A DNA stretch of 64,000 bases, taken from contig NC_058131.1 in the NCBI RefSeq assembly GCF_016433145.1, forward strand, positions 402,421,542 through 402,485,541. The letters are read 5' to 3'. Numbering within the stretch: the stretch's first letter is position 1; each line of letters begins with the position of its first letter. This document shows positions 24,301 to 27,300 of this stretch, piece by piece. The DNA is from Gracilinanus agilis (lineage: Eukaryota). Below the pieces are notes generated by a model. It saw only the letters and a program-made list of their open reading frames with translations. It was not told the origin of the DNA and did no database searches. The position numbers were made by a program, and so were the translations under genes.

Positions 24301-27300
24301 GGAAAGCACTTAGAGTATAGAGGTTTTATCTGAAAAATGAAGGGACTTGATTCCCTTTTTCTGGGAATATCCTGCTATATCCTGCTACAAATATCTATGG
24401 ATACCTTTATCTCTCCCAAAAGCTGAGCTAGGAAGGTTAGGATCACAGGAGCAGAGACCTAGAGCTAGAAAGAGCCTTGGAGGTCATCTAATCCAATCCC
24501 CTCATTTTCCAAGCAAGGAAACTGAGGCTTGGAGAGGTTAAGGGATTTGCCCAAGGCCACATGAGTGAATGATTTCAGTGCTGGGATTGAAACTCAAGTC
24601 TTCTTATTCCAAAGTCAAGCCAGCCCTCTCTACTGCAACCTTTCCCAACACAGAATCTTCCCTATTTGGGAATAAAAGAAATATAGAAAAGTAAGGCAGA
24701 GCTTTGACAAAAATTATGTTGTCAGGTTAAGGGTCAAAAGAAAGGTCATAGGATCATGGTTCCAGAGCTGGACTACCATCAGGCTTCTGAGTTCTAGTCC
24801 AGCTCTAGAACCATGATCAAATGAGGAAATTGAAAACCAGAGAAACTAAATGAATATGGCCTCACATGTAATAAATGTAAGAAGTGGGATTTGAATCCAA
24901 GTCCTTTGGATCTGGATATAGACTTAGTGGAATAGTAGTCACAATTTTTTTTAATTAGAAATAGATGAATTGGATGAGAAATTGAATAGGGGGAAAATAC
25001 ATACATGCATTTCCAAGACTGAGAGAAGTCATTTGGAGACTTTTTGGTTTTTAGGGGTATCCCTCCTGCTGCTCTCCCTCTAGTGAAGTGGACAATGAAA
25101 AACTGACTGACTTCTAATTACCTCCTGGGTTCTACTCCTGACTCCCATTTTGGAGATCAGGAAGGGAGGTGGAGACTTCCTCACAGTTTTAGGTCTTTGA
25201 CACAAGGGAAAGAAAGCTCCAAACAGGAAAGGGGAGGTCCCAGGATTTTTTGTAGATCCCATCTGCTTCCCGTTGTGGTGTGGAGGGAGGATGGAGGAAG
25301 ACAGGGCCTGGTGTCAAAGTTGGGGACTGTCATATGAGCTTTCCCTTCTGTTCCTGTTCTTGCTCCCTTCTCTGAGAATAATAATAATTGACATTTCTAT
25401 AGCCCTTTAAGGTTTGCAAAGTTTTTCCCACGCCTTCCTTCATTTGAAGCCCACAACAATCCTGTGAGGTAGGTACTGCAAATATTATTATCCCCATTCT
25501 AGAGGAAACTGAGATTGAGAAATGCTAAATGACTTGTCAGCTAATAAGCAGAATTAGAACCCAGATCTTCCAGACTCCTGTGGCTGAGTTCTATTCACTA
25601 TGTCAGCCTGTCCTTTACACACATTATAGTACATAGCACAGTACTATGCACATGATTGGAAATGAATAAATATTTGCTGAATGCATGAAATGAATCAATG
25701 AATGAGTCAATGAATGCATTGTGGTGGATAACTGAAAATTGATTATAAACACTGACATTCCCTCCCAGTCCAGACTGGCATTTCTAACCCATAAACTTCA
25801 GGACTTTAAAGAGGGTTAGAGTGGACCTATGGAAGCTGTCTCAGTCACACTCTCATCACTGAGGCTGAAGTGTTCTCACCCAAGTTAAATGGCAAAATGA
25901 TTACTCTGGCTCAAATCTCAGAACAGAACCCGGGCTCATTCTCTTTCTGGAAAATTCTATACCCAGAAAACTTCTCCAGCCCTAGTTGGACACTGTATCA
26001 TTTGTCGAATGTCCACCAAGATCAATTAATTAGTAGTTCAGTACTTGTGACAGCATTCTATTCTCAGCCTAATCATTTATCCATGAGATGAGTCACTCTA
26101 AGTGCACTAGAAGGGGATTTCCGGAGCTTACTTTATGACTGCACTTTGGGTTTATTCTTACTCCCAAACTAAAGGTTAAGGGGTTGTAACACCTCTTTGA
26201 TGTGCTATCAGCTCCTAATGAGGATAGGAGAAATAAGTAGCCAAATAAATATGGAAGCAAACACATTAAACTGATGGTGAACTTTAGCTTTAACATATGT
26301 GCGCTTCTAATAATAACTCAAATTTGGGTAGACACTAAGGCATGCAAAGGCCCACAAAATGTACGAGATTAGTGCTAGAATTATCATCCCCATTTAACAG
26401 GTAACAACTGAAAAGGACGGGGATTTAGTCTGTAGTCACATAGCAAGTAAGTCCCTTGGACACGTTGAAACCCAGGTCTCTTGATTCCAGATTCCAAAGC
26501 CAGAGTTCTTTCCACAACTCCTCATTCCTATTATACCAGGATATATTTTTCACCAGAGCTTTGTTTAATCCAACTCAACCTCAATTTCCCTTTTTTTTTG
26601 TTTTTAAACCCTCACCTTCTGTCTTAGAATCAATACTAAGTATCTGTTCCAAGGCAGAAGAGCTGTAAGGGCTAGGCAATGGGGGTTAAGTGACTTGTTT
26701 GTGGTCATACAGCTAGGAAGTGTATAATGTCAGATTTGAACCTGGGATCTCCCATCTCCAGGCCTGGCACTCTATCCACTGAGCCACCTAGCTGCCCCCT
26801 AAGCTTCCTTTTCAGAGAGAAGGAAGAGGCTGAGACAATAAAGGCAAACCTCAGCACCAATGGAGGACTGAGACAGCAAACATAAAGTAGATGCATGGGG
26901 ACCCCCAAATTTTCACTTGTACCATCTGTCTCTACCTGTCACCACCACATCTTGAACACCAGAACTGCTAATGAGGAATCCAAAAGAGCCGGAGAGACAG
27001 AGGAAAACCCATGATGGATGGGGACAAAGGAAAAGAGTGATTTGGTCCAAAGCATAGTTGGAGAGACAGACAGGAAGGGACTGATGAGATACACAAAGAG
27101 ACATGCACTCCCCCCCCACCTACACTTACCACCTGGCAAAGAGCAAGATAACGGAAAGAGGGGATCCCGGAGCAGACAGAGAGAAGAGGGAGAAATTAAT
27201 GAGGAGGCTCTAGTTCTGTCAAGGGAGCCAGGCATGAAGTACACAGGCACTATGGATCCCAGAGGGCCCATGCACACCTTACTTAACTCATGAGCCGCAC

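What the first reader, a model, noticed from the sequence alone, without database searches (positions are those of the whole stretch)
27100..27280. 3-nucleotide Val microexon in the PSD2 Sec7 domain with a neural-microexon regulatory signature
Seen (minus strand): a ~100-nt pyrimidine-rich tract with a distant ctcattaat branch-like element, two TGC triplets within 13 nt of the acceptor (ttgctctttgccag), a GTG exon at 27130-27132, a perfect GTAAGT donor, TGCATG about 22 nt downstream (27102-27107) and another upstream (27269-27274). Phase 0-0 gives [14 protein letters not shown]. Known: UGC near the 3' splice site marks SRRM4/SRRM3-dependent microexons, downstream UGCAUG is the RBFOX enhancer position, and the loop after Sec7 helix J contributes to Arf engagement. 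I recall, unverified, an HGHVNIG isoform in the paralog PSD3. Inference: a neuron-specific single-residue switch tuning Arf6 exchange activity, and evidence that this PSD2 segment is a functional gene. Standard annotation misses 3-nt exons.
Basis: partly seen in the sequence, partly recalled or inferred. Interest (0 to 1): 0.75.

Follow-up and report, generated by a model that had tools for sequence, protein, structure and literature searches.

The report
Conserved one-valine microexon in PSD2
The 3-base exon is real: it is the opossum-family copy of a single-valine microexon in the Arf6 activator PSD2 that is conserved from gar to mammals and already annotated in many other species, so it is a sound but not a new discovery, and its function is still untested.

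Summary
It is not a chance match. In Mus pahari, gerbil, cat, pigeon, anole and gar, the same PSD2 intron (between the exon ending HGH and the exon starting NIGKK) holds exactly one cag|GTG|gtaagtg. It always sits behind a 64-124 nt AG-free pyrimidine tract, and it is the only conserved island in that intron.

NCBI already annotates PSD2 isoform pairs that differ only by this valine, for example in gar and king penguin. The paralog PSD3 has it too, including the UniProt mouse entry. A gerbil RNA-seq contig carries CAT-GTG-AAC inside a full-length reading frame.

The intron architecture (UGC motifs, long branch-point-to-AG distance, perfect donor) fits SRRM3/4-type microexons. The downstream TGCATG is conserved in therians only, and the upstream one is found in this genome only.

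Only six PSD2 exons are visible. They lie on a 15.8-kb contig between 500-N gaps inside the HARS gene, most likely a scaffolding misplacement.

Verdict: already known in annotation, with modest interest.

The parts
28444..28502 (-). PSD2 exon A (59 nt), encoding ..[19 protein letters not shown]. This is the end of Sec7 helix H. Acceptor cag, donor gtaagt.
27195..27203 (-). Branch-point-like ctcattaat, about 70 nt upstream of the acceptor. A [C/T]TNA[C/T]-type element lies at a similar distance in most of the compared species.
   Evidence: position is inferred; the branch point was not mapped
27135..27207 (-). 73-nt AG-exclusion zone and pyrimidine tract (81% pyrimidine over 70 nt)
   Evidence: The same zone is 64-124 nt long in six other species.
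27162..27175 (-). Conserved upstream block CTGCTCCGGGATCC, which contains a UGC. Its core GCTCCNG lies at -35 to -44 in 6 of 7 species and is invariant in the six-species alignment.
27136..27145 (-). Two proximal TGC triplets (27145-27143 and 27138-27136). Their positions vary between species.
27130..27132 (-). The 3-nt microexon GTG (Val), phase 0-0, with acceptor AG at 27134-27133
   Evidence: The orthologous site is spliced into a gerbil mRNA contig.
27123..27129 (-). Donor GTAAGTG. It is invariant in all seven species.
27102..27107 (-). Downstream TGCATG (RBFOX-type motif) at +23. It is conserved at +20 to +23 in Mus pahari, gerbil and cat, and absent in pigeon, anole and gar.
27269..27274 (-). 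Upstream TGCATG at -142. It is not found within 400 nt upstream in any other species compared and is probably incidental.
23658..23747 (-). PSD2 exon B (90 nt), encoding [10 protein letters not shown]...DLLK (Sec7 helix I onward)
20855..20898 (-). PSD2 exon C (44 nt)
19334..19524 (-). PSD2 exon D (191 nt)
17754..17824 (-). PSD2 exon E (71 nt, start of the PH domain). It is the last PSD2 exon visible before the 500-N run at 16778-17277.

Best explanation
The GTG at 27132-27130 (minus strand) is the orthologue, in an opossum-family genome, of an ancient alternative 3-nt microexon of PSD2 (EFA6C). When included, it inserts one valine between HGH and NIGKK.

Shown:
- The site and its splice signals are conserved from gar to mammals.
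- Isoform pairs with and without the valine are annotated in many species, in both PSD2 and PSD3.
- The GTG is present in a spliced gerbil mRNA contig.
- The valine lies in the Sec7 alphaH-alphaI loop and makes it one residue longer than the loop length shared by cytohesins and the minus-Val form.

Inferred:
- Recognition of so small an exon relies on the perfect U1-complementary donor, a distal branch point, the long AG-free pyrimidine tract and UGC motifs. This is the architecture of SRRM3/4-dependent neural microexons. In therians an RBFOX site about 22 nt downstream probably adds to it.
- Inclusion is therefore probably neuron-enriched.
- The extra residue probably alters the Arf-facing surface of the Sec7 domain. 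The direction and size of any effect on Arf6 exchange are unknown.
For: - Motifs are at the stated coordinates, and this site is unique among the 35 similar sites in the window.
- There is exactly one ag|GTG|gtaagtg in the orthologous intron of Mus pahari, cat, pigeon, anole, gar and gerbil.
- In the six-species alignment, 13 contiguous columns (CAGGTGGTAAGTG) plus GCTCC are invariant, within intron sequence that otherwise does not align.
- In intron-against-intron blastn, the microexon block is the best hit against cat, pigeon, anole and gar (E from 3e-9 to 8e-4).
- Gar X1/X2, king penguin X1/X2 and catshark X4/X5 are identical apart from the valine.
- 53 of the 119 top PSD2 representatives carry the valine. 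In the PSD3-directed search 21 of 120 proteins checked carry it, including PSD3_MOUSE.
- Logan contig SRR15238960_40055 encodes the full 769-aa plus-Val gerbil protein with CAT GTG AAC at the junction.
- The ARNO alignment shows the plus-Val form as a one-residue insertion.
- In the AlphaFold model the valine is in loop 135-142, between helices 120-134 and 143-155. The model has the Sec7 fold.
- The architecture matches published features of SRRM3/4-dependent microexons (abstract).
Against: - Inclusion here, and its tissue pattern anywhere, are not shown.
- In placentals the intron after the HGH exon begins GTGAGT, so the GTG in the gerbil mRNA could in principle come from a donor shifted by 3 nt. 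That would need a non-GT donor (AGTTGG) and would not explain the conserved island.
- The downstream TGCATG is absent from pigeon, anole and gar, so RBFOX control cannot be ancestral.
- The window shows only six PSD2 exons, placed inside HARS. If this is a stray partial copy, it may never be spliced into a PSD2 mRNA.
- No paper describing this microexon was found, so all functional statements are inference.
Confidence: 0.9

Rival explanations
1. The microexon sequence is orthologous and intact, but this particular copy is a non-functional partial duplicate of PSD2 (exons A-E only) inserted antisense into a HARS intron. On this view the conserved signals reflect recent ancestry, not use.
For: - Only six PSD2 exons are visible. 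No upstream catalytic exon (GETQERER) and no downstream PH or coiled-coil exon is found anywhere in the window.
- HARS-type exons on the plus strand flank the segment at about 1.0-1.16 kb, 33.6 kb and 36.6 kb.
Against: - The segment is exactly one contig (17278-33125, 15,848 nt) between 500-N runs. Its neighbour (1708-16777) is 15,070 nt. This looks like small contigs dropped in by scaffolding (inference from common Hi-C scaffolding practice).
- All six exons have canonical cag/gt borders and an open frame.
- dN/dS against cat and mouse is 0.03-0.04 at dS of about 1.
- The missing neighbouring exons could lie beyond the contig ends, because these introns range from 0.4 to 10 kb in other species.
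Confidence: 0.12
2. The microexon is real, but it is not a neuron-specific regulatory switch. On this view it is included broadly or constitutively in some lineages, or the valine is functionally neutral.
For: - No tissue data could be obtained.
- Many plus-Val models are labelled X1, and the curated mouse PSD3 entry carries the valine, so inclusion may be the major form where the gene is expressed.
- UGC motifs and long pyrimidine tracts are suggestive, not diagnostic. The cited preprint itself says UGC is not strictly required.
Against: - About 450 million years of invariance of the codon and of both splice sites, with both isoforms retained in two paralogs, argues for selection on the alternative event.
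Confidence: 0.25
3. The extra valine in annotated isoforms comes from an alternative 5' splice site of the HGH exon (a tandem donor 3 nt downstream), and the intronic cag|GTG|gtaagt is an unrelated conserved element.
For: In Mus pahari, gerbil and cat the intron begins GTGAGT, so the first three intron bases also read GTG.
Against: - A shifted donor would begin AG, not GT.
- In the window, pigeon and anole the intron begins GTAAGT, and in gar GTATGT.
- The conserved island consists precisely of an acceptor, GTG and a consensus donor, with a long AG-free pyrimidine tract.
Confidence: 0.02
4. The site is a chance juxtaposition of splice-like motifs in an intron.
For: AG-NNN-GTRAG occurs 35 times in the window.
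Against: - No other such site combines the long AG-free pyrimidine tract, TGC motifs and a downstream TGCATG.
- The site is conserved in six other vertebrates and is the only conserved island in the intron.
Confidence: 0.01

Closest known systems
Annotated PSD2 plus-Val isoforms in other vertebrates (for example gar XP_069051478.1 against XP_006632183.2, fathead minnow XP_039504955.1, and X1 models of Mus pahari, gerbil, Geoffroy's cat and pigeon)
   Same: Same intron, same GTG codon, same cag acceptor and gtaagtg donor, same upstream GCTCCNG block, same HGH-V-NIGKK product.
   Different: Here the exon sits in an opossum-family draft assembly for which I could retrieve no protein model and no RNA data. 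The flanking intron is shorter (4.7 kb against 3-16 kb). The contig is placed inside HARS.
PSD3 (EFA6D) plus-Val isoform, including UniProt PSD3_MOUSE
   Same: The same HGH-V-NIGKK junction in the paralog's Sec7 domain, found in mammals, birds, amphibians, ray-finned fishes and sharks. This suggests the microexon predates the PSD2/PSD3 split.
   Different: It is a different gene. I could not fetch a PSD3 locus, so whether PSD3 uses a homologous 3-nt exon with the same flanks is not shown.
Cytohesin-1/2/3 3-nt glycine microexon (diglycine and triglycine forms)
   Same: A conserved 3-nt microexon that adds one residue to a structured domain of an Arf6 GEF (PMC6314551; PMC6724607).
   Different: The cytohesin residue is in the PH domain and changes phosphoinositide preference. 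Here the residue is in the catalytic Sec7 domain, and no functional difference has been measured.
SRRM3/4-dependent neural microexons as a class
   Same: Length 3-27 nt, in frame, strongly conserved flanks, UGC between branch point and AG, long branch-point-to-AG distance, strong 5' splice site.
   Different: Dependence on SRRM3/4 and neural-specific inclusion were not tested for this exon.

Membership tests
Orthologue of the annotated PSD2 Val microexon | Lies in the intron between the exon ending LNTDLHGH and the exon starting NIGKK | tested here: met
Orthologue of the annotated PSD2 Val microexon | Same codon and same splice-site sequences, alignable flanks | tested here: met
   13 invariant columns (CAGGTGGTAAGTG) plus GCTCC. 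It is the best intron-against-intron hit in 4 of 5 species.
Orthologue of the annotated PSD2 Val microexon | Spliced into mature mRNA | tested here: inconclusive
   Met for gerbil (Logan contig L007).
SRRM3/4-dependent neural microexon | Exon of 3-27 nt that preserves the reading frame | tested here: met
   3 nt, phase 0-0
SRRM3/4-dependent neural microexon | UGC motif between branch point and AG, long branch-point-to-AG distance, strong 5' splice site | tested here: met
   UGC at -42, -13 and -6; AG-exclusion zone 73 nt; G|GTAAGT donor. Criteria taken.
SRRM3/4-dependent neural microexon | Neural or endocrine-restricted inclusion that responds to SRRM3/4 | not testable with these tools
   No reads could be laid, and no paper or supplement listing this exon was found.
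RBFOX-enhanced exon | (U)GCAUG in the proximal downstream intron, conserved | tested here: met
   TGCATG at +23 here and at +20 to +22 in Mus pahari, gerbil and cat. It is absent in pigeon, anole and gar. Binding and dependence were not tested.
Sec7 domain (PF01369) of the EFA6/PSD family | Sequence and fold of a Sec7 domain around the insertion site | tested here: met
   Exon B alone hits Sec7 chains in the PDB. Orthologous full-length proteins carry PF01369 plus PH domains. The model matches cytohesin, ARNO and BRAG Sec7 structures at TM about 0.7.
Sec7 domain (PF01369) of the EFA6/PSD family | Catalytic glutamate exon (GETQERER) present in the same locus | tested here: not met
   It is not found anywhere in the visible window. 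It presumably lies beyond the contig end at 33125, or the copy is partial.

The most novel reading that the evidence does not exclude
The single-valine microexon is an ancient switch, at least as old as jawed vertebrates. PSD2 and PSD3 share it, and so it is probably older than their divergence. By lengthening the Sec7 alphaH-alphaI loop, which is bracketed by the positions equivalent to ARNO 198 and 208 that face Arf and brefeldin A, it would change the exchange rate or the Arf1/Arf6 preference of EFA6-type GEFs in neurons. That would be a catalytic-domain counterpart of the cytohesin PH-domain glycine microexon, and it has never been characterised.
Probability: 0.3. Interest if true: 0.55.

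Novelty: already known. Interest (0 to 1): 0.3.

Why it matters
It also gives the exon's exact coordinates for an opossum-family genome. Here the flanking intron starts GTA, so plus-GTG reads would be unambiguous.

Biologically, the result flags a very old one-residue alternative in the catalytic domain of two neuronal Arf6 exchange factors. I found no description of it in the searchable literature, although RefSeq and UniProt sequences carry it. Simple GEF assays with and without the valine could show whether it matters, as was done for the cytohesin glycine microexon.

It does not open a long-standing question. It is one of several hundred conserved neural-type microexons.

Tried and rejected
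I used them only in DNA alignment and in local scripts. For the same reason I ran no Rfam scan of the site.
- Joined model. Searches used single exons by reference or database proteins. One local script set the exon translations side by side with five database proteins to count identities. The dN/dS script worked exon by exon.
- Further PSD2 exons. Sensitive tblastn and blastn found none in the window.
- Literature. Searches for Psd2 or Psd3 with microexon, EFA6C, microexon with Sec7, and Srrm4 with Psd3 found no description of this exon. The MicroExonator supplements held as text do not name Psd2 or Psd3. The Srrm3 retina paper has no held supplements. A search for the ARNO brefeldin-sensitising mutations found nothing, so that point rests on general knowledge and on the titles of PDB entries 1R8M and 1R8Q.
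- PSD3 genomic loci. Two short isoforms were not on record and one gene was over 100 kb, so the PSD3 exon architecture was not compared.
- A marsupial PSD2 protein. It could not be retrieved, because only the best 120 of more than 2,300 hits are listed.
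Full report
**Observation.** I read the minus strand of 26900-27500.
- The acceptor cag ends at 27133, GTG is at 27132-27130, and GTAAGT is at 27129-27124, followed by G.
- TGCATG is at 27107-27102 and at 27274-27269.
- Two TGC lie within 13 nt of the acceptor, and ctcattaat is at 27203-27195.
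- The exon ending ...LNTDLHGH is at 28502-28444 and has a gtaagt donor. The exon beginning NIGKK is at 23747-23658. The junction is phase 0-0.
- Because this intron starts GTA, a GTG in the mRNA could not be intron read-through.
- One correction: the pyrimidine tract is about 73 nt long, not about 100 nt.

**Is it chance?** Both strands of the window hold 35 AG-NNN-GTRAG sites. This one has the longest AG-free stretch upstream (73 nt; no other exceeds 29), the highest pyrimidine content over 70 nt (0.81), two TGC nearby and a TGCATG within 60 nt downstream. Only 0.65% of all AG dinucleotides in the window have an AG-free run of 70 nt or more upstream. So the site already stands out within the window.

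**Protein databases.**
- *First search.* The flanking exons are too short for the word-index search, so I ran the 30-residue downstream exon, by reference, against the representative library. Two of the 136 hits read HGHVNIGKK.
- *Isoform pairs.* Cluster look-up and a script showed that spotted gar PSD2 isoforms X1 and X2 (839 and 838 aa) are identical except for this valine. The same holds for king penguin PSD2 X1/X2 and for isoforms X4/X5 of a catshark paralog. Fathead minnow PSD2 X1 also carries the valine.
- *PSD2 breadth.* A word search with the gar Sec7 region returned PSD2 from many vertebrates. 53 of the 119 further representatives carry the valine. They include rodents, carnivores, a rabbit, a shrew, bats, many birds, lizards and teleosts.
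- *PSD3.* The same search seeded with the catshark protein found the valine in 21 of the 120 proteins checked. These are mostly labelled PSD3 and come from mammals, birds, frogs, ray-finned fishes and sharks. They include the UniProt entry PSD3_MOUSE.
The statement that standard annotation misses such exons does not hold for this one.

**Orthology of the DNA.**
- I fetched the PSD2 loci of Mus pahari, pigeon, gar, anole, Geoffroy's cat and gerbil.
- In each, the intron between the HGH and NIGKK exons (3 to 16 kb) holds exactly one ag|GTG|gtaagtg.
- Upstream of it lie an AG-free zone of 64-124 nt, 73-87% pyrimidine over 70 nt, and a GCTCCNG block at -35 to -44 in six of the seven species.
- In the six-species alignment, the 13 columns CAGGTGGTAAGTG and the GCTCC core are invariant. 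The surrounding intron does not align.
- In intron-against-intron blastn, the microexon block is the best hit against cat, pigeon, anole and gar (E from 3e-9 to 8e-4). Nothing comparable appears elsewhere in the intron.
- This is the signature of a conserved microexon.

**Transcript evidence.** A Logan contig assembled from run SRR15238960 (3,764 nt) encodes the complete 769-residue gerbil PSD2 X1 and reads CAT GTG AAC at the junction. The gerbil genomic microexon lies 722 nt into a 13.5-kb intron.
- Caveat: in placentals that intron begins GTGAGT, so a donor shifted by 3 nt could formally give the same mRNA.
- Such a donor would start AG, and it would leave the conserved island unexplained. 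I give that reading 2%.

**Regulatory signature.**
- A recent mutagenesis study of SRRM3/4-dependent microexons describes their hallmark as a long branch-point-to-AG distance, a strong 5' splice site, and a UGC between branch point and AG in 74-79% of cases. UGC helps but is not strictly required (bioRxiv 10.1101/2024.09.17.613571).
- The site here has all of these features, and so do its orthologues.
The positions of the proximal ones drift between species.
- The downstream TGCATG is at +23 here and at +20 to +22 in Mus pahari, gerbil and cat, but it is absent in pigeon, anole and gar. It may therefore be a therian addition.
- The upstream TGCATG occurs only in this genome.
- All of this makes SRRM3/4-type, neuron-enriched inclusion the most likely regulation, but it remains an inference.

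**Protein context.**
- No EFA6/PSD Sec7 domain is in the PDB. The closest solved relative is ARNO (E = 8e-29).
- Against ARNO, the plus-Val form shows a one-residue insertion (HGHVNIGKKM against HN-PNVRDKM). The minus-Val form has the cytohesin loop length.
- An AlphaFold model of the cat Sec7 domain (mean pLDDT 79.5) puts the valine in loop 135-142, between helix 120-134 and helix 143-155. The catalytic Glu lies just before helix 95-112, so these are helices H and I. Model confidence dips in this loop. The model matches Sec7 structures at TM about 0.7.
- From general knowledge, not tested here: ARNO positions 198 and 208 bracket this loop. They are two of the four brefeldin-sensitising positions at the Arf-GDP/Sec7 interface. 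The PDB entries are those sensitised constructs.
- An effect on Arf engagement is therefore plausible, but its size and direction are unknown.

**Genomic context.** Earlier notes of this scan call the genome opossum-family. This agrees with the exon B sequence, which combines a residue otherwise typical of sauropsids with one typical of placentals.
- *What is visible.* Only six PSD2 exons are in the window: A, the microexon, B, C, D and E, spanning 28502 to 17754. All have cag/gt borders and a continuous frame. They are 94-95% identical in protein to cat, mouse and pigeon, with dN/dS of 0.03-0.04 against placentals.
- *What is missing.* No other PSD2 exon is visible.
- *Placement.* The segment occupies one 15,848-nt contig between 500-N runs. 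Its neighbour is a 15,070-nt contig. Both lie between plus-strand HARS exons at about 1.1 kb, 33.6 kb and 36.6 kb. An RRM gene (DND1-like) and WDR55 follow.
- *Reading.* My best reading (about 75%, inference) is that small contigs were dropped into HARS by scaffolding, and that this is part of the true PSD2 gene. A real partial duplicate cannot be excluded (about 12%). Either way, the microexon alone does not prove that the segment is a working gene.

**Comparison and novelty.** The feature is the orthologue of a microexon already present in RefSeq models of dozens of species, and in the PSD3 paralog's curated mouse entry. I therefore class it as already known. I found no paper that describes it. 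Reviews of Arf GEF splice variants cite only the cytohesin 3-nt glycine microexon. The untested possibility that it tunes catalysis is the most novel reading left open.

- N runs were left untouched.
- No contig taken for human was used.

Noticed in passing
window 1-37000 (+) and 16778-33625: The PSD2 exons lie antisense between plus-strand HARS-type exons: an ORF at 907-1176 that matches a HARS exon only from my memory of the human sequence (no Pfam hit), one at about 33626-33710, and an anticodon-binding-domain exon at 36566-36715. The intervening DNA is two contigs of 15,070 and 15,848 nt bounded by exactly 500 N. This looks like small contigs misplaced by scaffolding rather than a real insertion.
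   Followed up: partly
window 27162-27175 (-): The block CTGCTCCGGGATCC, about 35-45 nt upstream of the microexon, is conserved from gar to mammals more tightly than a pyrimidine tract would need. It holds the best-conserved UGC. What binds it is unknown.
   Followed up: partly
window 39822-41009 (+) and 41976-42440 (-): A 188-aa ORF with an RRM domain (DND1-like by position) and an exon matching the C-terminal end of the Pfam WDR55 family. This fits the HARS-DND1-WDR55 gene order that I recall from the human genome.
   Followed up: partly
window 28503-33125 (-): The exon carrying the catalytic Glu motif (GETQERER) lies 0.75-2.6 kb upstream of exon A in amniotes but 10 kb upstream in gar. It is absent from the 4.6 kb of contig upstream of exon A here.
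   Followed up: partly
window 1708-1790, 5400-5800, 16700-17300: The N runs are flanked by GAA/GGAA-type and CA microsatellites, so they look like assembly breaks at simple repeats rather than masked exons. They were not filled or looked up.
   Followed up: no
L001, L005, L006 (placental PSD2 loci): In the three placentals compared the intron after the HGH exon begins GTGAGT, whereas in the window, pigeon and anole it begins GTAAGT and in gar GTATGT. Plus-GTG reads are therefore ambiguous for aligners in placentals but not in marsupials or sauropsids.
   Followed up: yes
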